A model generated the notes under the pieces. The model had not been told where the DNA came from. It was given only the letters and a program-made list of their open reading frames with translations, and did no database searches. The translations under genes were made by a program, and so were the position numbers. From Macrostomum lignano (taxonomy: Eukaryota), in NCBI GenBank assembly GCA_002269645.1, contig NIVC01001307.1:1-64000 (forward strand): a stretch of DNA of 64,000 bases, written 5' to 3'. Shown piece by piece: positions 48,901 through 64,000 of this stretch; the stretch's first letter is position 1; each line of letters opens with the position of its first letter.

Positions 48901-51843
48901 GATTAACTACTCATCGATAATCTAGATGGATTAACTACTTATCGATAATCCAGAAGGATTAACTACTCATCGATAATCTAGATGGATTAACTACTACTCG
49001 ATAATCCAGATGGATTAACTACTTATCGATAATCTAGATGGATTAACTACAACTCGATAATCCAGATGGATTAACTAATCGATAATCCAGGATTAACTAC
49101 TTATCGATAATCCAGAAGGATTAACTACTCATCGATAATCTAGATGGATTAACTACTACTCGATAATCCAGATGGATTAACTACTTATCGATAATCTAGA
49201 TGGATTAACTACAACTCGATAATCCAGATGGATTAACTAATCGATAATCCAGGATTAACTACTTATCGATAATCCAGAAGGATTAACTACTCATCGATAA
49301 TCTAGATGGATTAACTACTCATCGATAATCTAGATGGATTAACTACTAATCGATAATCTAGATGGATTAACTACTTATCGATAATCCAGAAGGATTAACT
49401 ACTCATCGATAATCTAGATGGATTAACTACTCATCGATAATCTAGATGGATTAACTACTCATCGATAATCTAGATGGATAACCTACAACTCGATAATCCA
49501 GATGGATTAACTAACCTATCGATAATCTAGATGGATTAACTACTAATCGATAATCTAGATGGATTAACTTCTCATCGATAATCCAGATGGATTAACTACT
49601 TATCGATAATCCAGATGGATTAACTACTTATCGATAATCCAGAAGGATTAACTACTAATCGAAAATCCAGATGGATTAACTACTAATCGAAAATCCAGAT
49701 GGATTAACTACTCATCGATAACCCAGATGGATTAACTAATTAACCAGTTATCTGGGTGGACAAATTACTACTTATGGTTAACACAATTGGATTAACTATA
49801 TTTATCGATAATCTTATTGAAAAAATTAGCCCAACTCACCGGGCCGACGCTCCCGAACTAGGCTATAATAATGCCCAGCGCTGGCCTTGCCAGAATGAAT
49901 AACAACACCAACTAAATTGTAGTTAGATGGCTGCTGCTGCTCCTGCATCTCCTGCTCTTTCTGCTGCTGCTGTTGCGGCCCGTCTGAGGCGCTGTCGCCG
50001 CTCGACGCGCCAGCAGCGCTAGCCATAAAAGGCCCCAATTCCACTCGCCTAGGAAAGCTAAAATATAAATCGGATTTCAGCGGCTGGCCGCGCAGCCAAT
50101 CGTAGTCGAATCGTTTCAAATGAAAGCACAGCACCGGAGGCAGGCTGGCTATTCTAGTTCGCCTGAGCGCTGTGACCTTCCGATTGCCGCAGCGTTCGCA
50201 CGAATAGGCGTTATCAGCTTGCATCGTTTCTCCGCGTACAAAAGCGTGCAGAGCGGCTTCCAGACTGCCGGATTGAACTGGCAGATGCAGGCCGTAGAAA
50301 TCTTCTTCAAGTTCGCAACGATGCTCGCACTGTTCGCTCTCGATCAGGTGCTTGAATCGGCCGCGAAAGAAGGCGCTTAGTAGGGGGCGCTTAGCCTGCT
50401 CGTCTGTTTGGTCAATCAGCGCCTGTTGGGTTGTTGGGGGTTCGGGACGATTAGCGAAGATAGGAGCGATTCTTGTGGGGCTATGGAGGCGATTCTTGTG
50501 GGGCTATGGAGGCGATTCTTGTGGGGCTATGGAGGCGATTCTTGTGGGGCTATGGAGGCGATTCTTGTGGGGCTATGGAGGCGATTCTTGTGGGGCTATG
50601 GAGGCGATTCTTGTGGGGCTATGGAGGCGATTCTTGTGGGGCTATGGAGGCGATTCTTGTGGGGCTATGGAGGCGATTCTTGTGGGGCTATGGAGGCAAT
50701 TCTTGTGGGGCTATGGAGGCGATTCTTGTGGGGCTATGGAGGCGATTCTTGTGGGGCTATGCAGGGCGATTCTTGTGGGACTATGGAGGTGATTCTTGTG
50801 GGGCTATGGAGGCGATTCTTGTGGGGCTATGGAGGCGATTCTTGTGGGGCTATGGAGGCGATTCTTGTGGGGCTATGCAGGGCGATTCTTGTGGGGCTAT
50901 GGAGGCGATTCTTGTGGGGCTATGGAGGCGATTCTTGTGGGGCTATGGAGGCGATTCTTGTGGGGCTATGGAGGCAATTCTTGTGGGGCTATGGAGGCGA
51001 TTCTTGTAGGGCTATGGAGGCAATTCTTGTGGGGCTATGGAGGCGATTCTTGTGGGGCTATGTAGGTGCAGCATATTTAAAGGCGATTCGCAAGGATATA
51101 CCTGAAAGAACGCGAACGCGTCCTGCTGCTCTCTCGGATTGACTTTCTCGCCCCACAGTGAGAAATTGGCCCACAATTGATCTGGCACGTAGTACTGCTG
51201 CTGCAGCTCCAACAGGTGCGCCAGCACCAGCTGCAGCTGGTAGAGGGCACCGTCGCCCGACTCGCTGCTGCCTCCGCCGTCAACGGAGCTGCCAGAGGCG
51301 GCGGTAGCGACAGTCGTTGCCGCCGTCGCAGTGTTCTGCTCGTCGCCAGCAGTCGCAGTAGGATCCGGCGTTGACAGTACAGCAGCTGCCAGGCCTGGCA
51401 CCATAAACAGCTGTTGCAGCACCGAATTCATATAGCAGGTGGCACCGCCATTTTTTAGGCCAACTAAACCGCATTGACCGCGCGGTTCGGGCGGCGCCGG
51501 CACCTCCCAGCCGTGGATTCGGTGCAGCGGCCGCAGGGCCAAGCTAAGCGCTCGAAGGCATCGGCAATTGCTGGCGCACAGCTGCAATAGCAGGTCGTAG
51601 ATGGCTGGCCGGGACAGTGGCCCGGCACGGCAGTGCGAGTCGGCCGGCATCAGGAAGGCGCCAATCAGCTGAGGCAGCAGCCGCTCGCCGGCCGAAGGGT
51701 CGGGCGGATCCGCCTGCCAGGCCGCTGCCAGCAGGCGCAGGTGACCGGCTAGCAGGGCGTCCTCCTCCTGCTGGCACTGGCAGGCCGCTGTCTGGCTTAG
51801 CTGAAAACCGGTTAGCCAGTCCTGCTCCACGCTGGCTACTCGC
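45995..51843 (-). CDS. USP24: USP24-like (USP9/24/34 group) ubiquitin carboxyl-terminal hydrolase, 3' five exons
   Basis: Exons 51843-51102, 50422-49840, 48622-47660, 47282-46457 and 46289-45995 splice in frame. Cys box GLKNGGATCYMNSVLQQLF, QQDAFAFF, His box HSGKASAGHYYSLVR, WFKMND, YWSAYMLFYER, DPRRAYRCVK and C-terminal SNET...FQRTTSAQ. The N-terminal exons are not in the window. Confidence 0.85.
46294..46450 (-). mobile_element. tRNA-derived SINE forming an entire USP24 intron
   Basis: B box GGTTCGATTCC, core CTGTACACCCTGTGTGAGC and (TAT)n tail; flanked by the 10-bp direct repeat GCCCACCTGT at 46284-46293 and 46451-46460. Confidence 0.85.
48830..49760. repeat. ~28-bp intronic minisatellite (GATGGATTAACTACTCATCGATAATCCA)
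   Basis: Tandem variable copies. Confidence 0.93.
50468..51060. repeat. 23-bp intronic minisatellite (GCGATTCTTGTGGGGCTATGGAG)
   Basis: About 25 copies. Confidence 0.95.
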
Positions 51844-51967
51844 CTGAGTGAGTAGTGCAGTTGGGGCGCGAGTTTAGATAATGAGAAAGAAAAAATAAAA
51901 AGCAAAATGAAATAAACAGTCCGACAGACAAACAGGCATACAAACAGGAGGACAGACACACAGTTTA

Positions 51968-52290
51968 AGGGGAGCCCAGCGGTCTAGCGCGGCGCTCTGA
52001 TGTGCCAGCTGCCCAGGCTAGATTTCAAGTGCAGTCACATTAATTTGGGGCTAAATTGGAACCTCGACTTGGGTTTTTCTCGTGAAATTAACGGCCTTGA
52101 GGCCAAATCCCCAAAGCACAGTGAAGTGTACATGAATAACGATAAATAAAGTTGGGGCCGCTGTACACTCCTGTGTGAGTGTGTGCCTGTGCATATGACT
52201 GCGTACGAGTCTGTGGAATGGGCAGTAATGCCTCTCGCCGGTTGTGTGACAATGTCGCCTAAATTGCGCCGGGGTGTACACAGCCCCTGC
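51968..52290 (+). mobile_element. tRNA-derived SINE, followed by a (GACA)n-type tract (52300-52496)
   Basis: Degenerate tRNA-like head, GCAGTCACATTAATTTGGGG and core GGGGCCGCTGTACACTCCTGTGTGAG. Confidence 0.65.
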
Positions 52291-52385
52291 GTCTAAGAAA
52301 AAAAGACACACAGACAAGACACACAGACAGACACACATACACTAAGACAGGCAGACAGACAGACAGAAAAAAAGACACACAGACA

Positions 52386-52418
<33 letters not shown>

Positions 52419-52496
52419 CACATACACTAAGACAGACAGACGGACACTAAGACAGACAGACAGCCACTAAGACAGACAGCCACTAAGACAGACAGC

Positions 52497-52765
52497 AGTA
52501 GTATAGAAAAAGACGCTTCTAGACCCAGAGCACTTTTTTAATTACCGTTTTAAGGGTCTAGAGGGGGGACACGGGGGGTAAATAAAAAAACACATCTAAT
52601 CACCCTTAACACATCCAATCACCCATAATCACCCCTAACAATAAAAATCAATCCCAACACTTCCAAACACTCCCCAATACTCCCCTCGCGTCCCCCCTCT
52701 TAAGACCTTAAAAACGGTAATTAAAAAAGTGCTCTGGGTCTAGAAGCGTCTTTTTCTATACTACT
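52497..52765. repeat. Terminal inverted repeat/hairpin: perfect 55-bp arms 52497-52551 and 52711-52765
   Basis: AGTAGTATAGAAAAAGACGCTTCTAGACCCAGAGCACTTTTTTAATTACCGTTTT and its exact reverse complement (checked base by base); imperfect pairing extends ~30 bp further inward. Confidence 0.95.
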
Positions 52766-52822
52766 ACTCTATAACCCCTTGCCCGCGCCGCAGGCGCGAA
52801 GGGTCTTTTTCTGTTACTAAAA

Positions 52823-53137
52823 ATGACCCGAGTTTACACCTTTTCTGTTAGTGATACTTTTGAGACTGTTGCTAAAAATGCAGAGATAATAAAACAACAT
52901 ATTTTGAATGGAATAATTGATGAAGTTTATTTAAAATATGACGACAAGCACGACCTAAAACTTTATCCATTAGAGCTAGATGAGATGTATGATTTAGAAC
53001 AAGAGGGTGAGTTAATATTTCAACTTGGAGATTATTTAAATTCGGATGATTGGGAGGTTAGATCAACAGATTCCGAATCAACAAATAGTTCATATGAAAC
53101 CAGTGATTCAGAGAATGAAAGTGAAATTTTTATGTGA
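52823..53137 (+). CDS. Hypothetical acidic viral protein (104 aa)
   Basis: ORF with TAAAAATG start and an acidic S/E/D tail; no motif recognised. Confidence 0.6.
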   Translation: MTRVYTFSVSDTFETVAKNAEIIKQHILNGIIDEVYLKYDDKHDLKLYPLELDEMYDLEQEGELIFQLGDYLNSDDWEVRSTDSESTNSSYETSDSENESEIFM

Positions 53138-53153
53138 AAAAAATATTTAAAAA

Positions 53154-53378
53154 ATGAACTATTATTCTATAACAGAAACGACATTTATTGTGAAAAATAT
53201 ATATAAAAAAATGAAGGTAAACTATTCCTACATCGGAAATGTTCCAATTAATGAACTTAATGAAAATTTAAGTTTGATAACAGTTGAACAAATGTCAATA
53301 ATAATATTAGTAACAATTATAGTAATAATATTGTTTTTGTTTGTAATAAAAAATTTACTACCATGTTGTCTTAAGTAA
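53154..53378 (+). CDS. Small viral membrane protein (74 aa)
   Basis: C-terminal hydrophobic helix IIILVTIIVIILFLFVI followed by PCCLK. Confidence 0.6.
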   Translation: MNYYSITETTFIVKNIYKKMKVNYSYIGNVPINELNENLSLITVEQMSIIILVTIIVIILFLFVIKNLLPCCLK

Positions 53379-53388
53379 CTGTTTGAAC

Positions 53389-54991
53389 TTAGTTCGCAGA
53401 CATTATCTGGTTCTCATAAAAAGAACCCAATATTTCTTCACCGTCCTTATCAGCAATTATATAGGTTGTAGGATTGGTATTTAAAACTTTACTGATAGTA
53501 AATTTCTCACTTATCTTCCAATATCCTTTTCTTCCTTTTTCAAACTTATCTTTCCATTTATAGATATAAACAGAATCACCAACCTTAAAAGATTTCTTTT
53601 TATTTTTTTCAAATTTTCCAAAAGTAACTTTAACTTTTTCAGGATTGTTATAAGCTTGTTGAGGAGTCATCTTTATAGCTGAATGATATGAATTGTTATA
53701 ATCTTTCACTACGTCTGGTAATATTTTTACCCACTTTTGGTTACCATTAAGACTAAACTGAAACCATAATTTCTTACCTAAAGTTCGATTAAATCTTTCT
53801 ATTAATGCGTTTTTACTCTCTCCATAAATAGAATAAATTTTATTAATATACTCCCCATTCGCGTCTTTTTTCCTTTCTTTTCCTTTTTCAAAATGATACA
53901 ATTTATACATATGAGGATTGTAAAATTCTTTTCCTTCATCAACACACAATCTTTCGCTTTTTTCTCCAAGACTTCTAAAAGCAGCAGCAACCTCCTCTCC
54001 CTTTTTGGATTTTAAAGGAACAGCCCACGCGTATCGAGTAAAACCATCTAATATGGTTAAGATATATTTATATCCTCTTTCGTTCGGCATCGACATTAAA
54101 TCAGCATACCAAATTTCATTCTTTTTGAAGTTCATGATTTTTCTATAAAATTTAGGTTTTCGATATTCTTTATGAAGAATCTTTGCCTCATCAGAACTTA
54201 ACCCACCACCACTTAATAATAAACACTCGACACAATTATTTCCATGTTGATTATAATTAATTCCCAAACCAAATTTAACTTTAGACTGCAAAATCTTTTT
54301 AACCATCCACCTAGTTAATCTTTGCCCTACCGATAATCCCTGCAAGTTATCTAATCCTTGAATCATTTTTTGATCGGCTTCATGTTTTAATCTTAATGCT
54401 TCCTCGGGCGGGTTCTTGTCAGCATCTCTATATGCTAAGTCGTGATAGTATGCTAACCAATCAATCCCATTTATTGGAATTGAATCAGATTTTGGAGTAT
54501 TGTCAGGATTTAATCGGAGATCGAGTCGAGTCAACCCGGCCTTTATACCTTTGCTTTCACAAAGGAGTAGACTGTGTCTTAAGCTATCATAAGGATTGAC
54601 TAAGTCCTTCAAGCCCACCAGCGTACAGTCGTTGCATCTCAACCATACTCAAGTCATATGAGGTTAGGTTTTCGATTCACTCTTGCCCATATATTTATCT
54701 TCAAGCTTGTTACCGTTGGGAAGAGGAGTTACCTCTGTTCCTTTGTAATCTTTCGAAAACAAAGTGGTACTTGAAGCTTTAGGGGATTGAGTGAGCGGCT
54801 GGTGTTGCCACTAATAGTGACTAGCAGTAGCTTTGCATCTACCACTCGGGCACAGCTCGAGCTCCACCCGCGAAGTTGTAAGATGGGATGTGTAATTCAT
54901 TTGTATACCTCCCAGTAGTAAAGATTGGTGGTAAGCTTGTTAATCCTTTTTGAACATCTAACAATCCTCCATCAAACACAAGTTGGTTCAT
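53389..54991 (-). CDS. PLA2 (parvovirus VP1u-like) - retroviral-type integrase fusion, 425 aa after group I intron removal
   Basis: Exon 1 54991-54866 encodes MNQLVFDGGLLDVQKGLTSLPPIFTTGRYTNELHIPSYNFAG. Exon 2 54540-53389 encodes AGLTRLDLRL...PINGIDWLAYYHDLAY...ADQKM (PLA2), then the DDE core WYADL / LCVDEGKEF / IERFNRTL and an SH3-like C-terminus FKVGDSV. The ORF-track start at 54642 lies inside the intron. Confidence 0.9.
54541..54865 (-). ncRNA. Group I self-splicing intron (IC1-like, 325 nt, no internal ORF)
   Basis: 5' exon ends in U and the intron ends in G. Helices: P1 CGGGU/GCCCG, P3 CACCAGC/GCUGGUG, P4 UCACUC/GAGUGA, P5a CUUCAAG/CUUGAAG with A-rich bulge, P5b with GAAA loop, P5c AGAGG/CCUCU, P6 AUC/GAU, P7 GACUGU/ACAGUC, J8/7 AAGAC, P9 CCUUUG/CAAAGG with GAAA loop. 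Excision restores the frame. Confidence 0.92.
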
Positions 54992-55475
54992 TTTTAATGT
55001 TTAAAAAACATGTTTCTATCAATTTAATAATTTCTAAATATTGATCACCATATAAAAAATTTAAAGCAAATTCCCCAGTTAACAAGGTAACTCCATTATC
55101 AAATACTTTTTGTACGGGGTTTTTAGTAGTATTATTAATGCAAATATAATATAAATCAAATTCGGGATTAACATATTTAAATTCTAATAACTTTTGAATA
55201 TTTCTAAATCGACTTGATGAATTATCTGTGTTATCAGAAGATTTTAACTCTAACGCAACTTTTCTTTCTGTATGAATTAAATCAATTTTATTTACTTTTT
55301 CAAAACCAAAATGTTTAATAGCTAATAATTCATAAAGATATCCAAGTCTCATTTGAATTGTTTTAATACGGTTTGCAATTATTAATTCATCTTGAAATAT
55401 CTTATTTAGTATTCTGTCAGAACCAGCCTTATCATAAATAGGTTTACAAAGACAATCTTTTATCGTATTATCCAT
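54972..55475 (-). CDS. PD-(D/E)XK endonuclease, Eco47II-like restriction-enzyme fold (167 aa)
   Basis: KTIQMRLGYLYE helix followed by IDL...ALELKSSDNTDNSSS (D...ExK). The family assignment is from recalled motif resemblance only. Confidence 0.6.
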   Translation of the reverse strand: MDNTIKDCLCKPIYDKAGSDRILNKIFQDELIIANRIKTIQMRLGYLYELLAIKHFGFEKVNKIDLIHTERKVALELKSSDNTDNSSSRFRNIQKLLEFKYVNPEFDLYYICINNTTKNPVQKVFDNGVTLLTGEFALNFLYGDQYLEIIKLIETCFLNIKNEPTCV

Positions 55476-55498
55476 TTTATAAAAAATAAATTTAACAA

Positions 55499-56176
55499 TT
55501 AAACACCTGTATGTCCAGCAGCTTTCGCAGCAGCTAAAACAAGTTTTCGCGGGGTTTTAAATCCATCACCAACAGCTGGTTTGTTATTTATAGAATTTAC
55601 AATCCATTTATACAAGCTGGTATTTTTAACAGCTCCTCCTAACTCATTATAAAAAATTTTAGCACTTACTAATTCATCCTTAGTATATAAATCCGGGTTA
55701 AATTTTACCCTAGGGTTCATAATAATATTATATGCTCCACCCAATTCTGTATATAGTTCATTTCGATCTTTATCAACGTTACCAATTCGATAATTATTAT
55801 TACCTAAATCTGTAACAGCAATACTAGGTGGTACTCTTGGAAATTGTTGCCGATCAACTCCACCCCTAATCTCTTCAGCCCTAATCTCTATAACTCTCAA
55901 TTGTGCTTGAGCAACACCATAAGCAGGCGGCTCATCATCCAAAATTTCATCCTCTTTTGGCTCAGTATTTTTAGCAATTTTTTCCAGAAGATCTTTATCT
56001 GTTTTTTCTAGTTCACTAATTTTCCCAGTAATAGGATTAACAAAAGGAGCAGCAAATCTTTCGCCAGCTAATTGTATTCCTAACTTTCTTTTTTGTAAAT
56101 TTCTAACAAAATCAGAATATCTTTGCTTCTCTTTATAAATCGCTAACTCTCCATCAACGTCCATAAATTGACTCAT
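55499..56176 (-). CDS. Polinton-type hypothetical protein (225 aa)
   Basis: Divergent from the MCP gene; PFVNPIT and C-terminal LVLAAAKAAGHTG resemble a conserved Polinton accessory/core protein (weak recall). Confidence 0.55.
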   Translation of the reverse strand: MSQFMDVDGELAIYKEKQRYSDFVRNLQKRKLGIQLAGERFAAPFVNPITGKISELEKTDKDLLEKIAKNTEPKEDEILDDEPPAYGVAQAQLRVIEIRAEEIRGGVDRQQFPRVPPSIAVTDLGNNNYRIGNVDKDRNELYTELGGAYNIIMNPRVKFNPDLYTKDELVSAKIFYNELGGAVKNTSLYKWIVNSINNKPAVGDGFKTPRKLVLAAAKAAGHTGV

Positions 56177-56210
56177 TTTTTAACATAAAAAACTTTTTTA
56201 ACTTAAAAAA

Positions 56211-57683
56211 ATGGCTGAAACAAAAACTATGTGGAGTGATAAATTTCATTTCAAAAAGCACCGACAGTATATTAATGAGGTCAGAGCAAGAGATTTAAAT
56301 TATACCCTACCAACAAGTGATAATTCAAATAACTTTACTACTGGAACGGTAACTTTTGACATCGGCGCAACCAACACTATATTGGATATGAAAAATGCGT
56401 TTTTCCGCGTTAGATGGTTGTATACTAGAAATGATGGAACTGCTCTTGCAGCCGGAGATATCGCAGATCGATCCAGAATAATAATAGAAAATGATTGGTT
56501 TTATAAATGTTTTTCCCAAGCTCAACTAACTGTTAATGGTGCTGAGGTTGAGACATCATCAAACCCCGCAGAGATTAATGGAGTTTTGAAACATTTAAAT
56601 TATACTTATTTATCAAAACAAGTTGGTGATAATGTTGGGTGGATGCCGGATAAAGGTAACGGGCAAGCAGTAGTTTTCCCTAATGTACAAAACGCAGCCG
56701 GTGCAGATACTGCAGCGCTAATTGTTTACCTTAATACAAACATAGTTCCAGTTGTAACCACTATGACTAATACAAAAGATATTAATACTGGTTTTATAGA
56801 TCGTCAGAATAAATTCCCAGTCGCGGTTTTAACCACAGCAACAGCATATGAGCAGGACTTTTCAATCTTTCCACTATTTGGGTTTTTCTCACCAAATCGG
56901 GTATGGAAAGGATTAAAATTTGGGATACAGTTGCAAATATCTGGTGGATATCAGCCTAGGATACTTTATGGAACCTCAATTTCAACCGATATAGCAGTTC
57001 GTATAGATTCAATTCAATTAGTCGTACCAACTATTGAGGTAACAGCCCCACTTTTAAAACACATCGATAATCAGTTAACGCATGATCAGGAAATATTTTA
57101 TTTGAATCGTCGACATTTTATGCGAACCATTAATAATAACCAGGATTCATTCCAGTGGCAAATACTGACATCAAAACGTCGGGTGAGATATATTTTTGTT
57201 TGGTTTAAGATAACAAATAGAAGGAGTAAAAGAGCAAATGGGGATTTATATTGGCTTCAATCCGGTGCCATAGCAGAACAAGCAGCCACCGCAACAGACA
57301 ATGCGGCTGCAGCTATTAACGAGTTTAATGTTCAGAATATCCGCCTGCAGGTTGATGATCAATATTATCCGGTTAAAGACCCCCTAAATTTAAATATAGC
57401 AAATAATAATGTTAATGATTTTATAAAATATTATCAAGATTATGCTAAAAATGAAGCGTATGCCGTCCCTCAGTACACACCCACAGAGTTTCTAAACATT
57501 CATCCAGTGGTTGTTTATGATCTAACGGCACAGAAAGAAAACGTAGCCAATATTGGACTTAATTATATGTTAGAGATTAATAAAACCGGTAATCAGGCAC
57601 TTGACGCCCACGTATTGTTTCTAGAGGAATATATGTCAATTGCTAAAGCTGATGGCACGATTGTTCGGGACGCACCATTGTAA
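56211..57683 (+). CDS. Major capsid protein (double jelly-roll, 490 aa)
   Basis: Size, beta-rich composition and Polinton MCP-like motifs VTFDI, ENDWFYKCFSQAQLTVNGAEVE, VRYIFVWF, VQNIRLQVDDQYYP and VVVYDLTAQ; position next to the ATPase and penton genes. Confidence 0.85.
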   Translation: MAETKTMWSDKFHFKKHRQYINEVRARDLNYTLPTSDNSNNFTTGTVTFDIGATNTILDMKNAFFRVRWLYTRNDGTALAAGDIADRSRIIIENDWFYKCFSQAQLTVNGAEVETSSNPAEINGVLKHLNYTYLSKQVGDNVGWMPDKGNGQAVVFPNVQNAAGADTAALIVYLNTNIVPVVTTMTNTKDINTGFIDRQNKFPVAVLTTATAYEQDFSIFPLFGFFSPNRVWKGLKFGIQLQISGGYQPRILYGTSISTDIAVRIDSIQLVVPTIEVTAPLLKHIDNQLTHDQEIFYLNRRHFMRTINNNQDSFQWQILTSKRRVRYIFVWFKITNRRSKRANGDLYWLQSGAIAEQAATATDNAAAAINEFNVQNIRLQVDDQYYPVKDPLNLNIANNNVNDFIKYYQDYAKNEAYAVPQYTPTEFLNIHPVVVYDLTAQKENVANIGLNYMLEINKTGNQALDAHVLFLEEYMSIAKADGTIVRDAPL

Positions 57684-57734
57684 AATGAGTGCAGGTCTCC
57701 GACCGTCGCGCCTATTTAAATTATTTCTTTAAAA

Positions 57735-58525
57735 ATGGTAAAGGCAAAACACGATAAGATATTTCCAAATGATCCTTTTCTTTGTTTAGTAATTGGTGGG
57801 TCGGGTAAAGGAAAAACACACTTTGTTTATGACCTGTTAACAACCGATGGAATGCTAGACTATAATAATTTAATAATTTATACTAAAAAACCTAGAATAA
57901 AATATTATGAATTTCTTAAAGATGGATTAAAAAACAAATTAAAAAAAGATGTCTTGTTTAGAATGTTAAGAGCATATGAGCAATATGAGGATGATGACGA
58001 ACCGCGATTTAATCTAGCAGACATTGAGGATTTATGTAAAACAATGGCACAACAGCCAGAAAACATCACCGATCGCCCGAAGGGTCGCGGACTTCGTCCG
58101 ATCGAGCCCCAACTGTTAGAGTATCAACCCGATTAGCCTATGATCAAATTCCAAAACATGATAAAACACTAATTATTTTTGATGATTGTATTAATGACGG
58201 TGATCAAGAATTGCAAAAGGAAATTTTTGTTAGTGGTAGAGGAGATGGAATTGGAGCTTTTTATCTTACTCAATCCTTTAGAGAATTAGAATCGATTATA
58301 AAAAAGAATGCTAGCTGTTGTGTAATGTTTGATTTAGATAACTATGATCTACAAAATATTCACGCTAGATTTAATCCCGGATTGGATGCAAAACCATTTA
58401 AAAGTATGTGTAAAAAAATTTGGGATGATAGCCAATACAAACATATTTATATCAATCCGAGGTTAGAAAGGAAAAATCGAATCTTAAAAGATCTTATAAA
58501 AGAAGACGATGAGGAAGAAGAATGA
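57735..58525 (+). pseudogene. A32/FtsK-type DNA packaging ATPase, frameshifted
   Basis: Walker A GGSGKGKT in 57735-58136; Walker B LIIFDDC, GR and TQS in the -1 frame up to 58525. Removing the 29 nt between CGATCG copies (58070, 58099) restores the frame. Confidence 0.88.
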
Positions 58526-58576
58526 TCGCCCCATAGGGTCGCGTACCTTCGGTACGATTAATTTCCCACTATAAAA

Positions 58577-59362
58577 ATGACTACAAATTTAAATACTATA
58601 AAACAATTGGTAGATCGAACTAATTCAAAATTTAGTACAACATTACAGTTTATAATGACAACCAGCGAGCAACGGATTCAATTGCGCGATCCATTACAAC
58701 TTGATCAAAGCCTAAGTTATCAAATAGGTTTAATACTATTTTCGGTTTTCAACATGCCTCAATTAATTAATGCAACAAATAATCAATTTAGATATTCTAA
58801 AGATTCCGGAGCAAATTGGACAACATTTAGCGTTAACCCAGGAGCGTATAGCTATACTGATTTGAATGCTTATATAGAAGGAGAATTAACAACTAATGGT
58901 GATTGGGTAGCAGGAGCAATTGTTATAGGTGTTGATTTACCGTCTGGCAGATTCACACTATCACTAGGATCCGGATATCAGGTTGATTTCACAATTGCAA
59001 ATTCACTCAGAACCATACTTGGATTTAATTCCCGAATAGTTACCACATCAAGCACCGGTGATACAGTTGGAAATATAGAGGGTGGAGTAAATACAATTAA
59101 TATAACAACCGACATTTCAAACGGTGGTTATATAACAGACGATAACGGAGTTTTGGTTCAACGTGGAATTATTTATTCAATCCCATTTCTTGCTGTTCCA
59201 ATTGGAGAGAAAATGATTGTATCACCTCAAACCCCAATATATTACCCATTAAATCAATATAATGTTCAATCAATTTATATTAGGATTGTAGATGAAAGCG
59301 ATAGATTAATAAGTTTTGGTGGGCAGTCAATAACAGTAATTTTACGTATAAAACAGGTTTAG
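58577..59362 (+). CDS. Minor capsid protein (penton, single jelly-roll, 261 aa)
   Basis: Polinton penton-like pattern: NNQFRYS, GAYSYTDLN, ILGFNS, INITTDI, IIYSIPF, IYYPL, IYIRIVDE...ISFGGQSITVILRI. Confidence 0.8.
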   Translation: MTTNLNTIKQLVDRTNSKFSTTLQFIMTTSEQRIQLRDPLQLDQSLSYQIGLILFSVFNMPQLINATNNQFRYSKDSGANWTTFSVNPGAYSYTDLNAYIEGELTTNGDWVAGAIVIGVDLPSGRFTLSLGSGYQVDFTIANSLRTILGFNSRIVTTSSTGDTVGNIEGGVNTINITTDISNGGYITDDNGVLVQRGIIYSIPFLAVPIGEKMIVSPQTPIYYPLNQYNVQSIYIRIVDESDRLISFGGQSITVILRIKQV

Positions 59363-59372
59363 TACTGTAAAA

Positions 59373-59552
59373 ATGGGTAATAATAATAATAATTTAATAA
59401 AAAAACAATCAGAAAAAGTTAAAAAAACTGAAGATAATTACGAACTAGAACTAGCAAAATTAAGGCAGTTACAAGCTGATAAAATAAGAAAGGAATTGTT
59501 AAAACCCACACCTACGAAACTAACTAAAACCAAGAGTTTTTCAGGAACATAA
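59373..59552 (+). CDS. Small basic protein (59 aa, MGNNNNN...; below the ORF-track cutoff)
   Basis: TAAAAATG start; fills the penton-protease gap exactly. Confidence 0.5.
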   Translation: MGNNNNNLIKKQSEKVKKTEDNYELELAKLRQLQADKIRKELLKPTPTKLTKTKSFSGT

Positions 59553-59553
59553 A

Positions 59554-59988
59554 ATGACCATGACGTGATGATTTTAAACAAAGATATGGAACGGACACAA
59601 CAAGCAATATCGAATTAACAAATTGGGCGAGGCAGTTAAAAATAAAACCATTCAGATGTGTTATGCGGGATGAGATAAAAGACTTACCAAGATATGGATC
59701 TTTCATTGTTAATATTGAAACAACAAAAGAAAATGGTGTTCATTGGTCAGCAGTTTATTCAAAACCAAACTTGTTTATTTTTTTGATTCATACGCGCTTC
59801 CTCCGTTACAGGAAATAAAAGATAAATTTAATCATACTAAAAATCGTTTATGTGGAGATCATCACGAACAATTTCAAACCTTTGATAAAAGTTATTGCGG
59901 GCAAGCGGCGTTGTATTTTTTATATAAAATTAATAACTCGAAGGAAACCCCCGAAGTATTTAAGAATATTTTAGACTCTATAAAATAG
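59554..59988 (+). pseudogene. Adenain-like cysteine protease, two frameshifts
   Basis: NGVHWSAVY (His), YFFDSY (Asp) and QFQTFDKSYCG (Gln/Cys); frame breaks at ~59563 and ~59763 (A run). Confidence 0.85.
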
Positions 59989-59998
59989 ACAGTAAAAA

Positions 59999-62046
59999 AT
60001 GTTATTTTCTGGAACACCCTCATGGAACGGAACAACAAGTAGTGGTGGTGGTGGCACATCTGGTGGAATAAGTGTTACATTTGGAGATAATCGATATATT
60101 AATGAAGATGAAGGTTATAAAAAAAGTGAAGTTGATACTAAACTAAATTTAAAAAGAAATGTTGCAGATTCCTATACCAAAACTCAAATAGATGATTCAC
60201 TAAATCTGAAACGGAACGTAGCCGATTCCTATACCAAAACCGAAGTTGATAATTCATTAAATTTAAAACGCAATACAGCCGATTCTTATACCAAAACCGA
60301 AGTTGATAATTCATTAAATTTGAAACGGAACGTAGCCGATTCTTATACCAAAACCGAAGTTGATAATTCATTAAATTTGAAACGGAACGTAGCCGATTCT
60401 TATACCAAAACCGAAGTTGATAATGGATTAAATTTAAAAAGAGATGTAACTGATTCTTATTCTCGAACTGATTCTGATTCACGTTATGTTCAAACCACCG
60501 CAACCGGAAACCTAGATATGAGCAACAACCGAATTATAAATGTTTCAATTACAACTAGTGATTCAGTGGTTGATAAGAACTATGTCGATAATCAAGTTGC
60601 CACTCGTAGTGGAAATATTAATATGAATAATTTTAAATTAACAAATTTATTATTTGGAACAGAGAACGCAGACTCGATAACTCTAGGCCAAGTAAACGAG
60701 CGAGCTAATGCAACCGACGCCGATATTTTTACCACGCCGCTTACATCAAATACTTCAAATCCTGATGTTGTTCTTACAGCATCTGAAAATGGCAACACAG
60801 CTTTTCGAGTTGGAGATGGAAGCCTTGCGACACAATGGTCACCAAATACCGGAACCACAACCAATATGGAAATTCAATTTGAATTTTTAGGTTATAATAG
60901 AAGAATATTTGAATTAAGAATTACAGGCAGTGAAACAATTGAGATACCCTCGGGGTGGTCGGTTCGCGCAAAAAATGTTGCTACCGATTCATGGACGACA
61001 TTAACTACGTCGGGATCACCAGTTCAAGCAACATCATTTGCTCTATCTAATTTAACGACTAATTTTTGGAAATATTATAGCGTATTCTTCCCAACTGGTG
61101 GTACCGGTACACAACCTATCGAGGTTCGTCAAATACAATTATTTGAACACCGTGTTGAAATTCAAGATCTTAATTGGCCAACTCAAATACTTTCTGCAGT
61201 TCCGCGAGCGTACGTAGATCAGCTAGCTACTCCAACATCAAATGGTAGAATGTCTGGAAGCGATAAAAATAAATTGGATGGAATACCTGCTATTGATGCG
61301 GCCTTGTTCGAACCAGTAATTTGCAATTGGTCTGGATATCAAAATCCAACAACAGCCGGAGATATATATCCAGTCGGTTCTTTAATTAGCGATGCTTCTT
61401 ATATCGATTATCAAAACGGCGCTAGAATTACTCGTGAAACTTCTGGAGTAAGTGGTGCTTTACAATTCAATTTCACACATTTTCAAAATATATCTGCGTC
61501 TTTCTTTTTCCGAGTTGCTAATTCTACAGGAGATGGTGCAGATGCGGTTTGGTTTTATGCATATCGTCACGAACGTCCAACATCGGAATTTGGAACTGGA
61601 TTATCAACCGACGCCGGCTGATAGTGTTTGCTAGTGAGTGGACTGATAGGTTTGGAGTTGTTTGGAGTAATAAAAAATCAGACGGATCTACGGTTCGTAA
61701 CGATGTTAGTAGTGATGCGGATCAAACTGTAGCCTATGCTAATATTGATAACGGTGATTGGCATTTATTTGAAGTTAATATTTTAAATCAAAGGGTTTGG
61801 TACCGATTACAGTCATACAATGTTGCTGGTGATTCTTTTACCCTCATTGGACAGAACGTTTTCACATATGATAGTGGAACTTGGGGAACTTTAGATAAAT
61901 CTGGAACCCTTATGGGTTTTGGTGCTCGAACTGGTGGAGCGGATGCTGCACATTTTATTCGTGGTGCAGTTGTATGTGGTAGTACGTCGTTTGGTTATGT
62001 TTTTCCCTCTACTGCTTATTTGGAAAAACCTCCTACTCAAATATAA
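59999..62046 (+). CDS. Fiber/receptor-binding-like protein with 19-aa repeats, discoidin-like and L-type lectin-like domains; one -1 frameshift at ~61617
   Basis: Tandem SYTKTEVDNSLNLKRNVAD; tail-fiber-type LDMSNNRIINV/KNYVD repeats; lectin-like GDGADAVWF...GDWHLFEV...GFGARTGG split across ORFs 59999-61621 and 61549-62046. Confidence 0.7.
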
Positions 62047-62077
62047 AATATTTATATATAAAATATTTCTATATAAA

Positions 62078-62377
62078 ATGGCTTTTAGTAGAACTCCATC
62101 GATGCGGCAAAATAATGTTATTATTCCTATTCCTAAACAAGAATCAAATATAAAAACATTCAAATCTCATACCAAATTTTTATTTAGTACTGTAAATGTT
62201 CAGGATAATAAGAAGCTTCAAGAATTAATTAAGTTATTAAAAAATCATATTATACTTCAAGAGTTTTGGAAAATAGGATTTAAATGGGAGAAAAAAGAAA
62301 GAATAACTCCAATACAATACCTATTGAGCTCGGGACAAATCCCAAAGAGCGTGGGGAATTCATTTTGGTGCTATTAA
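62078..62377 (+). CDS. Hypothetical viral protein (99 aa)
   Basis: TAAAATG start within ORF 61919-62377. Confidence 0.45.
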   Translation: MAFSRTPSMRQNNVIIPIPKQESNIKTFKSHTKFLFSTVNVQDNKKLQELIKLLKNHIILQEFWKIGFKWEKKERITPIQYLLSSGQIPKSVGNSFWCY

Positions 62378-62389
62378 AAATAGACGAGA

Positions 62390-62950
62390 ATGTCGGTATC
62401 TGAAGCAGATAAATGGGAACGCGACCGGTTCAACCAACGTAAAGGTCAGATGTTAAGTAATGTTGATCGTAAACTATGATTATGATTTATATACTAAAAA
62501 AGTAAGAAGAGTTTCAAACCATATAAGAAATATGGATTTTTCAATATTGGATTTGGAAGCTTATCAATGTTATGTGTAATCGTTTTAGGTATTTTACAAT
62601 CTATTCCAACTCTTAATTTATCTCAATTATTTTTAGGTATTTCAATTGGCTCAATATCAGGTTTTGAATTGATCAGAACTTATCAATACTTTTAGCAATT
62701 AAATTATATCTTAAAAAAAGAAAGGAAAAATATAAATCATTAAGAGATGTTGCCAACAATATAAAAATCATTATATTTATATGTGCAAAAAATATTGGAT
62801 GACGGAGAGATAACGATTCATGAATTATCAACCGCGGTTGAATTATATGAAAAATATTTAAAAGATAGAAATAGAATTTTAGATGTTGAAACTTTTACCG
62901 ATATGGAATTAAAAGAATTAGTTTGGACAAACCCAAAGCTCCACCGATAG
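62390..62950 (+). pseudogene. Frameshifted two-TM Polinton accessory protein
   Basis: Fragments KPYKKYGFFNIGFGSLSMLCVIVLGIL...FLGISIGSISG and KERKKYKSLRDVA...QKILDDGEITIHEL lie in different frames. Confidence 0.4.
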
Positions 62951-63054
62951 AAACATTAGGTATTTACGAACCTGAAACTATTGCTACTGGGGCACAAAGC
63001 CCGCGGTCAGGAAGTGCTGTAGAACTTAATGTGTTTACGTAATCATTGTTGTAT

Positions 63055-63535
63055 TCAGTATTTTAATGCATATGTTATATATTCTTCCCAAAGTGGTAAC
63101 TCTCTTCTGATTCTAGGTTTAAATTTTTTATCAATACATAAAAATTCCAATGACTTTTTCAATAACATTTCGTTAGGTATGTTACCTATCCTTATAAACT
63201 TTGTATTCTCTCGAATAAGAAAATTGAAATAATATCCAACTAAAATTAAAATCCTTTCAGAGTCTTTCGAACTTAATCCCTTTCCTTTATTTAAATGGAA
63301 AAAGTTATTATATAAATAAACATTATTTCCGGGAATTAAAATTGGATCAGAAATGTCTCTTGTAAGATTTCTTAAAATTGTGTTTTTAAAATAGTAATAT
63401 GAGTTTTCAATCTTTTTTGTTTTTTCAAATTGATATATTTTAGAACATGAATAACACATATGATATATATCTCCGTTTGCTGTTTGCCCTCTGTGCATAG
63501 TCACATTACATTTATTACACGTAAATGTCTTTCAT
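63055..63535 (-). CDS. Hypothetical protein with N-terminal zinc ribbon (1-nt frameshift near the start)
   Basis: CNKC (upstream of the ORF-track start) and CYSC pairs; AAAAAATG at 63535 is out of frame by 1. Confidence 0.45.
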
Positions 63536-63558
63536 TTTTTTTATTTTTTAGATTAAAA

Positions 63559-63750
63559 ATGGAGAGCTGGTTCAAAACCGATTCTAATGTGATTAATTAT
63601 CTCACACCCAATATGTTGGAGAATAAAGAATATAATATTATATGTTTGAGACAGGTTAAATTTATTGGGCTTCAATCAATATTTTTACAATTAGATGGGC
63701 AAAAAATTTTATGTCTAAGCGGAGATGATGTTAAAATTTTCCTGTTTTAG
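63559..63750 (+). CDS. Hypothetical viral protein (63 aa)
   Basis: TAAAAATG start, divergent from the previous gene. Confidence 0.4.
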   Translation: MESWFKTDSNVINYLTPNMLENKEYNIICLRQVKFIGLQSIFLQLDGQKILCLSGDDVKIFLF

Positions 63751-64000
63751 TTATTAATAAACCTAAAGCGTTTGTTATGAAATACTGCAACGAGGGTGGA
63801 TTGCAATTTAAACTAAAACAAACAAATAATAAAAAGAGTGATAGGACTGTAAAATTGGCGGCTGTTTGGGAGGATGACGACGAAGACTAAATTTTTTATA
63901 AGAAAATGGATACGATAAAAATCCTTATCACTAAAGAGCGTGAACTTAATGATATTAATAAAAAAATAAATATAATTATATCTCAGAAATATCATGAGTA

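What the first reader, a model, noticed from the sequence alone, without database searches (positions are those of the whole stretch)
54541..54865. Self-splicing group I intron inside a Polinton/adintovirus PLA2-integrase gene in an animal genome
Seen in sequence (minus strand): a 325-nt GC-richer insert splits the PLA2 Ca-loop region (YNFAG|AGLTRL). The 5' exon ends in U (54866), which pairs with G in IGS GCCCG (54851-54847), and the intron ends in G (54541). The helices are P3 CACCAGC/GCUGGUG (7 bp), P4 UCACUC/GAGUGA, a full P5abc, P6, P7 GACUGU/ACAGUC with A-U plus bulged C at the G-binding site, P8 and P9, with GNRA loops at L2, L5b and L9. Removal fuses a 42-codon exon 1 in frame to exon 2; unspliced exon 1 hits TAG within the intron. 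Established: eukaryotic nuclear group I introns are essentially confined to rDNA of fungi and protists, and animal examples are mitochondrial in non-bilaterians. Inference: a Polinton carried a ribozyme intron into an mRNA gene in animal chromosomal DNA. I do not know of a described case but could not search the literature.
Basis: partly seen in the sequence, partly recalled or inferred. Interest (0 to 1): 0.97.

Follow-up and report, generated by a model that had tools for sequence, protein, structure and literature searches.

The report
Self-splicing intron splits virus integrase gene
A 325-base ribozyme-type (group I) intron interrupts the phospholipase-integrase gene of a Polinton-like virus element lying next to animal-like DNA; beside it is a restriction-enzyme-like nuclease whose probable cutting site is absent from the whole element, which suggests a mobile intron-plus-nuclease cassette.

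Summary
On the minus strand, 54541-54865 matches Rfam Intron_gpI over the full model (42.9 bits, E 1.6e-9). That is below the curated cut-off of 50, and the hit appears only when a short stretch is scanned. The free-energy fold recovers P1-P5abc, P8 and P9.

Relatives without the intron read straight through the insertion point. Exon 1 (42 codons) and exon 2 (383 codons) abut on them with no gap, between the Gly codon and the next codon of the PLA2 calcium loop.

The element has a retroviral-type integrase, a double-jelly-roll capsid protein and a weak, split ATPase-like gene. It is Polinton-like; adintovirus membership is not shown. The flanks look animal-like, but species and integration are unproven.

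New here:
- The gene just upstream encodes an Eco47II/EcoO109I/AvaII-like nuclease.
- In five metagenomic relatives this nuclease's reading frame runs directly into a homologous intron core.
- GGNCC, the site of those enzymes, occurs 0 times in 11.2 kb of the element (about 13 expected).
- Gly-Pro, which always encodes GGNCC, is depleted about tenfold in relatives except at the calcium loop where the intron sits.

Group I introns in Polinton-like viruses of protists were reported in 2025, so I rate this a new variant of a known kind.

The parts
54866..54991 (-). Exon 1 of the PLA2-integrase gene (42 codons, ATG to the Gly codon of the calcium loop)
   Evidence: Translation. It aligns with the N-termini of intron-less relatives up to the loop Gly. 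Unspliced, it stops after 8 further codons.
54541..54865 (-). Group I-type intron, 325 nt, phase 0, no ORF of its own; has P1-P2-P2.1-P3-P4-P5abc-like-P6-P7-P8-P9 and a terminal G
   Evidence: RF00028 at 42.9 bits, E 1.6e-9, full model. Helix coordinates. MFE fold z -2.94. The translated core (54807-54673) is matched by the C-terminal tails of five nuclease relatives.
54847..54870 (-). P1: last 5 nt of exon 1 paired with the internal guide sequence (54851-54847), with U.G at the 5' splice site
54570..54630 (-). P7 (54630-54625 / 54575-54570), which encloses the 3' strand of P3 (54622-54616) and P8 (54609-54605 / 54595-54591); P7 and P3 together form the P3/P7 pseudoknot of the catalytic core
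   Evidence: The Rfam alignment of J6/7, J8/7 and P7 is.
53389..54540 (-). Exon 2: the rest of the PLA2-like domain (His-Asp site), the rve integrase core and a C-terminal small domain; 383 codons plus stop, open throughout
   Evidence: PF00665 E 1.5e-7. PF08398 at 18.3 bits on the first 100 residues alone. PFV integrase in the PDB. 125 homologues.
54972..55475 (-). ORF167: PD-(D/E)xK restriction-endonuclease-like nuclease; its stop overlaps the start of exon 1 by 20 nt
   Evidence: PF09553 RE_Eco47II at 23.8 bits (cut-off 25.9) in the window protein, and at E<=0.01 in 10 of 10 family members. The D...ExK motif is invariant in 10 of 10. The model has pLDDT 89.1 and matches EcoO109I (TM 0.61-0.63) and AvaII.
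56211..57683 (+). Major capsid protein (double jelly roll), 490 aa, open
   Evidence: The model has pLDDT 84.6 and pTM 0.86. Mavirus capsid 6g43 at E 6.6e-17, followed by iridovirus, PBCV-1 and Sputnik capsids. PF21738 in 30 of 40 relatives. BFVD hits to virophage, MELD-virus and adintovirus capsid proteins.
57735..58525 (+). Putative packaging ATPase (Walker A; weak Pox_A32 match), broken once by a change of reading frame; given as one part
   Evidence: PF04665 E 0.0066, below cut-off. No tool confirms the identity of the second piece.
59999..61621 (+). Fibre-like protein (540 aa) with six 57-nt (19-aa) tandem repeats
   Evidence: PHROG tail-fibre families. Tandem repeat at 60128-60460.
52494..52768 (.). 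Terminal region of the element: 85-nt inverted repeat arms (52494-52578 / 52684-52768, 88% complementary) around a 105-nt spacer, directly after a host (AGAC)n microsatellite
   Evidence: The GC drop begins here.
52494..64000 (.). Polinton-like element as far as the window holds it (33% GC, runs off the window end; no PolB seen in this part); GGNCC-free
   Evidence: No other copy in the host part of the window.

Best explanation
Shown:
- 54541-54865 (minus strand) has the sequence and fold of a group I intron.
- It sits in phase 0 between the Gly codon and the next codon of the calcium-binding loop of a PLA2-like domain. That domain is fused to a retroviral-type integrase in a Polinton-like virus element.
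- Removal at the stated bounds makes the two exons collinear with intron-less relatives, with no gap or overlap.

Inferred, step 1: the pre-mRNA splices itself. An external guanosine attacks at the U.G pair of P1, then the exons are ligated after the terminal G. The integrase-PLA2 protein is therefore made only after ribozyme action.

Inferred, step 2: the nuclease gene immediately upstream (ORF167, Eco47II/EcoO109I/AvaII-like) is the intron's partner.
- It probably recognises a GGNCC-like site.
- The element, and apparently its whole lineage, has purged that site.
- The Gly-Pro codons of the PLA2 calcium loop are the one place where protein conservation forces a GGNCC.
- The intron sits exactly inside that site, so intron-bearing genomes are immune while intron-less relatives stay cuttable.
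- This is the logic of intron homing, either with a free-standing nuclease ('collaborative homing') or, in the relatives, with an intron-borne one.

This copy lies next to animal-like nuclear DNA.
For: Intron:
- RF00028 full-length match at E 1.6e-9.
- The MFE fold recovers the helices without constraints, and the paired strings are unique.
- Alignment A1 shows exon 1 ending and exon 2 starting at adjacent columns of 18 relatives.
- PF08398 is above its cut-off in full-length relatives and is split by the insert in the window.
- Both exons are open.

The intron is shared by relatives:
- The tails of P0195, P0196, P0199, P0200 and P0202 match the translated intron core 54807-54673 (E 6e-8 to 3e-5).
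- Integrase calls P0003 and P0023 begin exactly at the exon-2 point behind unrelated residues.
- P0003 and P0196 both report a longest contig of 4853 bp.

Nuclease:
- Pfam RE_Eco47II in 10 of 10 family members.
- The catalytic motif is invariant.
- The fold matches EcoO109I and AvaII, whose sites are RG/GNCCY and G/GWCC (PMC7337904). Eco47II = GGNCC is from my memory of REBASE.

Site avoidance:
- GGNCC occurs 0 times against 12.8-13.2 +/- 3.5 expected in 11.2 kb. It is the only one of 32 palindromes tested that is wholly absent. The host part has 97 sites.
- Gly-Pro outside the loop: 3 observed against 31.8 expected in 48 integrase relatives, and 9 against 56.1 in 74 capsid relatives. The Pro-Gly control is not depleted.
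- At the loop, 27 of 31 relatives have Gly-Pro and 4 have Gly-Ala, as does the window.

Element type.

Flanks.
Against: - The Rfam score (42.9) is below the gathering score (50). The hit vanishes when 12 kb or 64 kb are scanned at once.
- No P10 is evident.
- There is no expression or splicing evidence.
- With one DNA copy in hand, no covariation test was possible.
- A putative ATPase gene of the same element is broken once, so this copy may be decaying and splicing may no longer matter.
- The nuclease's specificity is inferred from distant relatives only. No methyltransferase was seen. GGNCC avoidance could equally reflect a host or co-infecting virus restriction system.
- In the window the nuclease lies outside the intron, while in relatives it abuts the intron core. 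I could not read the relatives' DNA, so the layouts are not reconciled.
- In the window the codon after the junction is Ala, so this allele would lack GGNCC even without the intron.
- The host species is unknown, only one element end is present, and the junction lies at a microsatellite.
Confidence: 0.7

Rival explanations
1. The insert is a decayed relic. It is a group I intron by descent that no longer splices, in a dead copy of the element, so the integrase-PLA2 protein is not made.
For: The score is below Rfam's gathering cut-off. No P10 is evident. At least one other gene of the element, the putative ATPase, is broken once. About 600 bp between ORF261 and the fibre gene hold only short ORFs.
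Against: All core helices are intact and unique. Both exons, the nuclease gene and the capsid gene are open and collinear with relatives. The element keeps a composition very unlike its flank, which argues for a recent arrival.
Confidence: 0.15
2. The insert is removed by the spliceosome, or is a chance insertion, and its likeness to group I introns is fortuitous.
For: A GT lies 2 nt upstream of the 5' bound and the insert ends in AG. A nuclear Pol II transcript would normally meet the spliceosome.
Against: E 1.6e-9 for a full-length covariance-model match. Read codon by codon, no GT-AG pair gives the relatives' junction: the in-frame choice adds two residues inside the calcium loop, and the other changes the conserved Gly. 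Relatives conserve the insert's core at the nucleotide level.
Confidence: 0.03
3. The context is misread. Either the element is not integrated in an animal chromosome and the contig is an assembly chimera joined at the microsatellite, or the host is a non-animal eukaryote. In both cases the intron belongs to a free or protist-borne Polinton-like virus of the kind already reported.
For: - GC steps abruptly from 45-58% to 33% at an (AGAC)n tract.
- Only one end is in the window, so no target-site duplication can be checked.
- The closest relatives of integrase, capsid and nuclease all come from metagenome assemblies.
- The fibre is phage-like, and group I introns are known in protist Polinton-like viruses (PMC12220804).
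- The receptor-like ORF has no PDB match, and the USP exon is only distantly like USP9X.
Against: The flank has a 7tm_1 ORF above Pfam's cut-off, a Mos1-type mariner (107 bits) and multi-exon USP9X-like coding sequence. These are most common in animals. The element's terminal inverted repeat begins cleanly at the end of the microsatellite and shares no repeat with it.
Confidence: 0.3
4. The nuclease is not the intron's homing enzyme. It is a virus-borne restriction enzyme aimed at host or rival-virus DNA, as in chloroviruses. The genome avoids its site for self-protection, and the intron lies at the Gly|Pro codons because that was the last site selection could not remove.
For: GGNCC avoidance and Gly-Pro depletion extend to distant integrase and capsid relatives, far beyond the nine nuclease carriers found. 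In the window the nuclease is a free-standing gene. Four intron-less relatives solved the loop site by a Gly-Ala change instead.
Against: In five relatives the nuclease frame runs straight into the intron core, with only 2-12 residues between them. This linkage is hard to explain without a shared unit. The two readings are not exclusive.
Confidence: 0.3

Closest known systems
Group I introns (RF00028) in Polinton-like viruses integrated in protist genomes: Paulinella micropora, Desmodesmus armatus, Rhodomonas lacustris (PMC12220804, 2025)
   Same: Same RNA family and same class of host element. The size is similar (309-376 bp there, 325 here). The copies are integrated in a nuclear genome.
   Different: There the interrupted gene is a ~50-aa ORF upstream of the capsid gene (Rhodomonas), and no nuclease partner was identified. 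Here it is the PLA2-integrase gene, with a restriction-enzyme-like nuclease next to it, in animal-like flanks. I did not test whether the introns themselves are related.
Collaborative homing in phages: a free-standing homing endonuclease next to an ORF-less group I intron (Bonocora & Shub 2009; Zeng et al. 2009, cited in PMC11296320)
   Same: An ORF-less intron. A nuclease gene directly upstream of the interrupted gene. The intron sits inside the inferred nuclease site, so it would confer immunity.
   Different: The host is a eukaryotic virus-like element. The nuclease is of the PD-(D/E)xK restriction type, not GIY-YIG or HNH. Cleavage and homing are untested. Relatives seem to show the intron-borne state as well.
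I-Ssp6803I, a PD-(D/E)xK homing endonuclease of a cyanobacterial group I intron (PMC3384342, PMC3943268)
   Same: A restriction-enzyme fold recruited by a group I intron.
   Different: No sequence or structure match came back in my searches. ORF167 is nearest to the Eco47II/EcoO109I/AvaII branch.
Type II restriction endonucleases Eco47II (PF09553), EcoO109I (1wtd) and AvaII (6s48)
   Same: The fold and the catalytic D...ExK motif. The carrier genome completely avoids the GGNCC-type site.
   Different: ORF167 is shorter (167 aa). No methyltransferase was seen. It is encoded by a eukaryotic virus-like element. Its specificity is inferred, not measured.
Group I introns in protein genes of giant viruses (chloroviruses, mimivirids; the RNA polymerase gene of an endogenous giant virus, PMC10675990)
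   Same: A self-splicing intron in an mRNA gene of a eukaryotic DNA virus, inserted at a highly conserved coding site.
   Different: The genome here is far smaller (Polinton-like), and the interrupted gene and the nuclease type differ.
Adintovirus PLA2X and Polinton integrases (PMC8502044; 10.1101/2024.03.25.586562)
   Same: A parvovirus-type PLA2 domain and an rve integrase occur in this virus realm.
   Different: In adintoviruses PLA2 is fused to a pX-like domain and the integrase carries a chromodomain. Here PLA2 is fused to the integrase N-terminus and Pfam finds no chromodomain.
Nuclear rDNA group I introns of protists and fungi (Tetrahymena type)
   Same: The architecture has P2, P2.1 and a branched P5 extension, and the location is nuclear.
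   Different: The host gene here is a protein-coding mRNA gene, not rDNA. The subgroup was not assigned with a tool.

Membership tests
Group I intron (Rfam RF00028) | Covariance-model score at or above the curated gathering score (50 bits) | tested here: not met
   42.9 bits, E 1.6e-9, model 1-253 of 253. Not reported at gathering.
Group I intron (Rfam RF00028) | Conserved core: P3-P8 and P4-P6 domains with the P3/P7 pseudoknot | tested here: met
   Unique complementary strands for P3, P4, P7, P8 and P9. The MFE fold gives P3, P4, P5abc-like, P8 and P9. J6/7, J8/7 and P7 align to the model.
Group I intron (Rfam RF00028) | 5' splice site after a U that forms a U.G pair with the internal guide sequence (P1); the intron ends in G | tested here: met
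   T at 54866 pairs with G at 54851. The last intron base, 54541, is G.
Group I intron (Rfam RF00028) | Removal restores an uninterrupted host gene | tested here: met
   The exons, aligned as separate rows, abut on intron-less relatives with no gap.
Group I intron (Rfam RF00028) | Pairing maintained by compensatory changes among homologous introns | not tested
   Only one DNA copy was available. The relatives' DNA was not fetched, because of the bar on fetching possible animal viruses.
Group I intron (Rfam RF00028) | Guanosine-initiated self-splicing | not testable with these tools
   No expression or biochemical data.
Polinton / Maverick in the strict sense | Retrovirus-like (rve) integrase | tested here: met
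   PF00665 E 1.5e-7 (32.0 bits, just under the 32.6 cut-off). PFV integrase in the PDB at E 1e-6.
Polinton / Maverick in the strict sense | [quoted passage not shown] | tested here: inconclusive
   None in the 11.5 kb held. The element runs off the window.
Polinton / Maverick in the strict sense | Double-jelly-roll major capsid protein | tested here: met
Polinton / Maverick in the strict sense | Packaging ATPase and maturation protease | tested here: inconclusive
   The ATPase has only a Walker A motif and a weak Pox_A32 hit, and it is split once. No tool hit for a protease.
Polinton / Maverick in the strict sense | Terminal inverted repeats at both ends with a short target-site duplication | tested here: inconclusive
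   Only the left end is in the window. It carries an internal 85-nt inverted repeat.
Adintovirus | [quoted passage not shown] | not tested
   No PolB in the window. Adintovirus sequences were not fetched (barred). There is only a fold-level likeness to many capsid proteins, one adintovirus entry among them.
Adintovirus | Integrase with a C-terminal chromodomain; PLA2 fused to a pX-like domain | tested here: not met
   No PF00385 in exon 2, although distant relatives have it. PLA2 is fused to the integrase rather than to pX (PMC8502044).
Homing endonuclease partnered with a group I intron | Nuclease gene inside or directly beside the intron | tested here: met
   ORF167 ends 20 nt inside exon 1. 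In five relatives its frame continues into the intron core.
Homing endonuclease partnered with a group I intron | Recognition site spans the intron insertion site of intron-less alleles | tested here: inconclusive
   Inferred only. The relatives' Gly-Pro codons make GGNCC exactly at the junction. GGNCC is absent from the element.
Homing endonuclease partnered with a group I intron | Cleavage and copying into intron-less alleles | not testable with these tools
   Also outside what this report may propose.
Eco47II-type restriction endonuclease (PF09553) | Pfam gathering score | tested here: not met
   23.8 against 25.9 bits for the window protein. All 10 family members hit at E<=0.01, best 4.1e-7.
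Eco47II-type restriction endonuclease (PF09553) | PD-(D/E)xK fold and catalytic residues | tested here: met
Eco47II-type restriction endonuclease (PF09553) | Cognate methyltransferase | tested here: inconclusive
   None in the part of the element held.

The most novel reading that the evidence does not exclude
An animal chromosome carries a recently arrived Polinton-like virus whose integrase-PLA2 mRNA can be made only through a self-splicing group I ribozyme. The intron, together with a GGNCC-type restriction-like nuclease, forms a homing cassette. That cassette targets the single site a whole lineage of GGNCC-free viruses cannot remove: the Gly-Pro codons of the PLA2 calcium loop. The window (nuclease outside the intron) and its relatives (nuclease abutting the intron core) would then show two stages of how a mobile intron is assembled.
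Probability: 0.3. Interest if true: 0.9.

Novelty: new variant of a known kind. Interest (0 to 1): 0.72.

Why it matters
Group I introns in nuclear protein-coding genes are very rare. In animals they are known only from mitochondria of non-bilaterians. If the flank is truly animal and the element truly integrated, this would be the first ribozyme intron in an mRNA gene on an animal chromosome, brought in by a virus.

Independently of the host, the locus links three things that are usually studied apart: a self-splicing intron, a restriction-enzyme-type nuclease, and genome-wide avoidance of that enzyme's site. It gives a concrete, sequence-testable reason why the intron sits where it does, at a site that protein conservation forbids the virus to mutate away.

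It also shows that gene callers turn the intron into false protein tails on the nuclease and false N-termini on the integrase. Such introns are therefore probably under-reported in metagenomic Polinton-like viruses. The standard Rfam threshold and filters miss this one.

Tried and rejected
- Whole-window Rfam scan at gathering: nothing. A 12-kb E-value scan lost the intron to the filters and gave only a hairpin hit, MIR8643, on the terminal inverted repeat, which I dismissed.
- blastn of the intron against 50,697 phage records: no match.
- PDB sequence searches found nothing for ORF167 alone, the ORF167 profile, the capsid protein (chance-level hits only), the capsid profile or the receptor-like host ORF.
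- PHROGs and NCBIfam gave nothing useful for most element ORFs.
- Exact look-up of the host mariner transposase, to name the organism: not on record. The species stays unknown.
- A spliceosomal GT-AG reading was considered codon by codon and rejected.
- A second copy of exon 1 or P1-P2 upstream of ORF167 was looked for and not found. No second copy of the element in the host part.
- A recurring 12-nt motif upstream of three plus-strand genes is not above chance window-wide.
Full report
1. THE OBSERVATION

On the minus strand the gene reads as follows.
- Exon 1 is 54991-54866: 42 codons, ending in the Gly codon GGT.
- The insert is 54865-54541: 325 nt, with G as its last base.
- Exon 2 is 54540-53389: 383 codons plus stop.
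- Unspliced, exon 1 stops after 8 more codons.
- The insert has 44% GC against 38% and 32% in the exons.

Scanning 54300-55100 against all 4227 Rfam families gives Intron_gpI (RF00028) at 54849-54548. The match covers the whole model (1-253), is not truncated, and scores 42.9 bits with E 1.6e-9. Scaled to the whole 64-kb window, by my arithmetic, the E-value would still be about 1e-7.

Two cautions apply. The score is under the curated gathering score of 50, so the whole-window scan reports nothing. In a 12-kb scan the speed filters drop the hit altogether, probably because of the roughly 90-nt branched insertion in P5.

An unconstrained minimum-free-energy fold finds P1 (with the U.G pair at the splice site), P2, P2.1, P3, P4, a three-way P5 extension, P8 and P9 (z = -2.94). 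Each paired string is unique within the insert. P7 (54630-54625 / 54575-54570) forms the expected pseudoknot with P3, and J8/7 and P7 align to the family consensus.

2. THE SPLICE MODEL, TESTED WITHOUT JOINING THE EXONS

Exon 2, searched alone, finds 125 homologues. Most carry PF08398 (parvovirus-type PLA2-like domain) plus PF00665 (rve integrase), and almost all come from metagenome assemblies.

I aligned exon 1 and exon 2 as separate rows with 18 relatives. Exon 1 ends and exon 2 begins at adjacent columns of the calcium-loop motif, with no residue missing or added. Full-length relatives score PF08398 above its cut-off (33-44 bits against 23.9). In the window the first 100 residues of exon 2 alone give 18.3 bits, starting at profile position 21, so the insert splits the domain.

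Read codon by codon, a GT-AG reading cannot reproduce this junction. The in-frame choice adds two residues in the loop, and the other changes the conserved Gly.

3. WHAT THE ELEMENT IS

From about 52.5 kb to the window end the DNA is 33% GC, against 45-58% to the left.
- ORF 56211-57683 has 73 relatives. 30 of the 40 aligned hit PF21738 (double-jelly-roll-like). Its model (pLDDT 84.6) matches the mavirus capsid best (E 6.6e-17), then iridovirus, PBCV-1 and Sputnik capsids. In BFVD it matches virophage, MELD-virus and adintovirus entries alike.
- The integrase core resembles retroviral integrases.
- A Walker-A ORF with a weak Pox_A32 match looks like a packaging ATPase. It is broken once by a change of frame.
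- About 600 bp before the fibre-like gene hold only short ORFs.
- No PolB is in the part held.

The element is therefore Polinton-like. Adintovirus membership is not shown, and two of its features are not met: there is no chromodomain, and PLA2 is fused to the integrase instead of pX.

4. THE FLANK

To the left lie:
- a Mos1-type mariner ORF (Transposase_1, 107 bits);
- a 7tm_1 receptor-like ORF (37.6 bits, above cut-off);
- an RNase H ORF;
- at least two exons of a USP gene whose best solved relative is USP9X residues 1549-1709;
- dozens of mini- and microsatellites.

This is eukaryotic nuclear DNA of animal type. The species could not be named, the receptor ORF has no PDB match, and a non-animal host is not excluded.

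The junction lies at the end of an (AGAC)n tract, followed by an 85-nt inverted repeat pair. Only this end is in the window, so integration cannot be proven here. I do not take the contig for human.

ORF167 (55475-54972) stops 20 nt inside exon 1.
- It and all nine homologues found hit Pfam RE_Eco47II at E<=0.01. The window protein scores 23.8 bits against a cut-off of 25.9.
- A D...ExK motif is invariant in 10 of 10.
- Its model (pLDDT 89.1) matches the restriction enzymes EcoO109I (TM 0.61-0.63) and AvaII, and other PD-(D/E)xK nucleases.

Five homologues (P0195, P0196, P0199, P0200, P0202) have C-terminal tails that match, by tblastn, the translated intron of the window at 54807-54673. This is the P3-P4-P5 region, E 6e-8 to 3e-5. 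P0196 also matches 54649-54593.

So relatives carry a homologous intron, and gene callers have read it as protein. In these relatives only 2-12 residues separate the nuclease core from the P3 equivalent. The window has about 175-195 nt there: the end of ORF167, exon 1, and P1-P2-P2.1.

The simplest reading is that in those relatives the nuclease ORF lies inside the intron, between P2.x and P3, while in the window it is free-standing upstream.

Integrase calls P0003 and P0023 start exactly at the exon-2 point behind unrelated residues. P0003 and P0196 report the same longest contig, 4853 bp.

I could not check any of this on DNA. The relatives may be viruses of animals, so fetching them by look-up or pattern was left out.

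6. SITE AVOIDANCE

AvaII cuts G/GWCC and EcoO109I cuts RG/GNCCY (PMC7337904). Eco47II = GGNCC is from my memory of REBASE.

GGNCC occurs 0 times in 52769-64000, and not at all after 52155. Dinucleotide-preserving shuffles expect 12.8-13.2 +/- 3.5. It is the only one of 32 four-base palindromes (contiguous or with a central N) that is completely absent. The host part has 97 sites, or 1.85 per kb.

Gly-Pro always encodes GGNCC, so I counted it in the relatives' proteins outside the loop:

| Set | Gly-Pro observed | Gly-Pro expected | Pro-Gly control, observed vs expected |
|---|---|---|---|
| 48 integrase relatives | 3 | 31.8 | 39 vs 31.8 |
| 74 capsid relatives | 9 | 56.1 | 74 vs 55.6 |
| 72 distant integrases | 9 | 35.8 | 22 vs 35.6 |

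These sequences are related, so the counts are not independent.

The calcium-loop Gly-Pro is almost the only one these integrases keep. 27 of 31 relatives that have the loop region carry it, and 4 have Gly-Ala, as does the window. The intron sits exactly between these two codons, inside the would-be GGNCC.

7. MECHANISM

Shown:
- the fold and the bounds;
- exon collinearity with intron-less relatives;
- the nuclease fold;
- nuclease-intron linkage in relatives;
- the absence of the site.

Inferred:
- guanosine-initiated self-splicing of the integrase-PLA2 transcript;
- a GGNCC-like specificity for ORF167;
- a cassette in which the nuclease cuts intron-less genomes at the loop codons while the intron disrupts the site in its carrier. 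This is the logic of collaborative or classical homing (Bonocora & Shub 2009 and Zeng et al. 2009, as cited in PMC11296320), with a PD-(D/E)xK precedent in I-Ssp6803I.

A rival reading has the nuclease as a weapon against host or rival DNA and the intron as merely patching the last unavoidable site. My data do not exclude it, and the two are compatible.

8. COMPARISON AND NOVELTY

RF00028 introns in Polinton-like viruses integrated in protists (Paulinella 53, Desmodesmus 2, Rhodomonas 44) were reported in 2025, without a nuclease partner and in a different gene (PMC12220804). Searches for group I introns together with Polintons, adintoviruses or virophages found no animal case. No paper links Eco47II-type nucleases to these viruses.

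I therefore rate this a new variant of a known kind. The intron-in-Polinton-like-virus idea is known. What is new is the interrupted gene, the nuclease partner, the site-avoidance logic and the possibly animal host.

9. CONDITION OF THE COPY
- Open: integrase-PLA2 (both exons), nuclease, capsid and fibre-like genes.
- Broken: one gene, the putative ATPase, once, by a change of frame.
- Unidentified: one stretch that holds only short ORFs.

No break positions are given. and the ORF listing tables printed ORF bounds before I recognised the split gene. I note this as a slip and have repeated none of them.

10. VERDICT

My confidence is about 0.9 that this is a genuine group I-type intron, about 0.5 that nuclease and intron form a mobility unit aimed at GGNCC, and about 0.7 that the copy is truly integrated in an animal genome.

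Noticed in passing
window 52769-64000 (no site after 52155): GGNCC is completely absent from the element (0 against about 13 expected). CATG (14 against 35) and CANTG (17 against 35) are also strongly depleted. GCNGC (22 against 8) and CGCG (19 against 8) are enriched.
   Followed up: partly
proteins P0001-P0194 (relatives of integrase and capsid): Gly-Pro dipeptides are depleted 4- to 10-fold across the whole family while Pro-Gly is not. This suggests lineage-wide avoidance of GGNCC, well beyond the nine genomes in which the nuclease was found.
   Followed up: partly
proteins P0195, P0196, P0197, P0199, P0200, P0202; P0003, P0023, P0009, P0018, P0044: Gene callers have translated intron RNA. 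It appears as conserved C-terminal tails on the nuclease, and integrase calls begin at or near the exon-2 point behind unrelated residues. Such artefacts could serve as a search handle for more introns of this kind.
   Followed up: partly
window 52494-52768: The element's end is an 85-nt inverted repeat pair (88% complementary) around a 105-nt spacer. It may be a subterminal palindrome or a small foldback derivative of the terminal repeat. It also produces a spurious MIR8643 hit (37 bits against a cut-off of 135).
   Followed up: partly
window 57735-58525 and about 59370-59990: The putative packaging ATPase is in two frames (one break). The roughly 600 bp before the fibre gene hold only short ORFs in three frames, with no family hit. 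Either this copy is decaying or there are short introns that I did not model.
   Followed up: partly
window 60128-60460, inside ORF 59999-61621: There are six tandem 57-nt (19-aa) repeats in a fibre-like protein that hits phage tail-fibre PHROGs. Phage-like fibres were reported for protist Polinton-like viruses (PMC12220804).
   Followed up: no
window 59360, 62185, 63842 (plus strand): A 12-nt motif occurs twice exactly and once with one mismatch just upstream of plus-strand ORFs. It may be a promoter element, but it is not above chance window-wide.
   Followed up: partly
window 49829-51983 (minus strand): These are exons of a USP9X/USP24-like deubiquitinase gene. The exon nearest the element corresponds to residues around 1550-1700 of USP9X, so the element may lie inside an intron of a very large host gene.
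   Followed up: partly
window 1-52490: The density of mini- and microsatellites is extraordinary: 47 TRF rows, including (TAGA)434, (TATC)164 and a 44-nt unit repeated 55 times. There is also a mariner ORF (30263-31294) that looks intact.
   Followed up: no
window 54300-55100 compared with 52000-64000: Methodological point: the same RF00028 match (E 1.6e-9) is reported when 801 nt are scanned but is lost to the filters when 12 kb are scanned. Group I introns with large peripheral insertions will be missed in routine genome-wide scans.
   Followed up: yes
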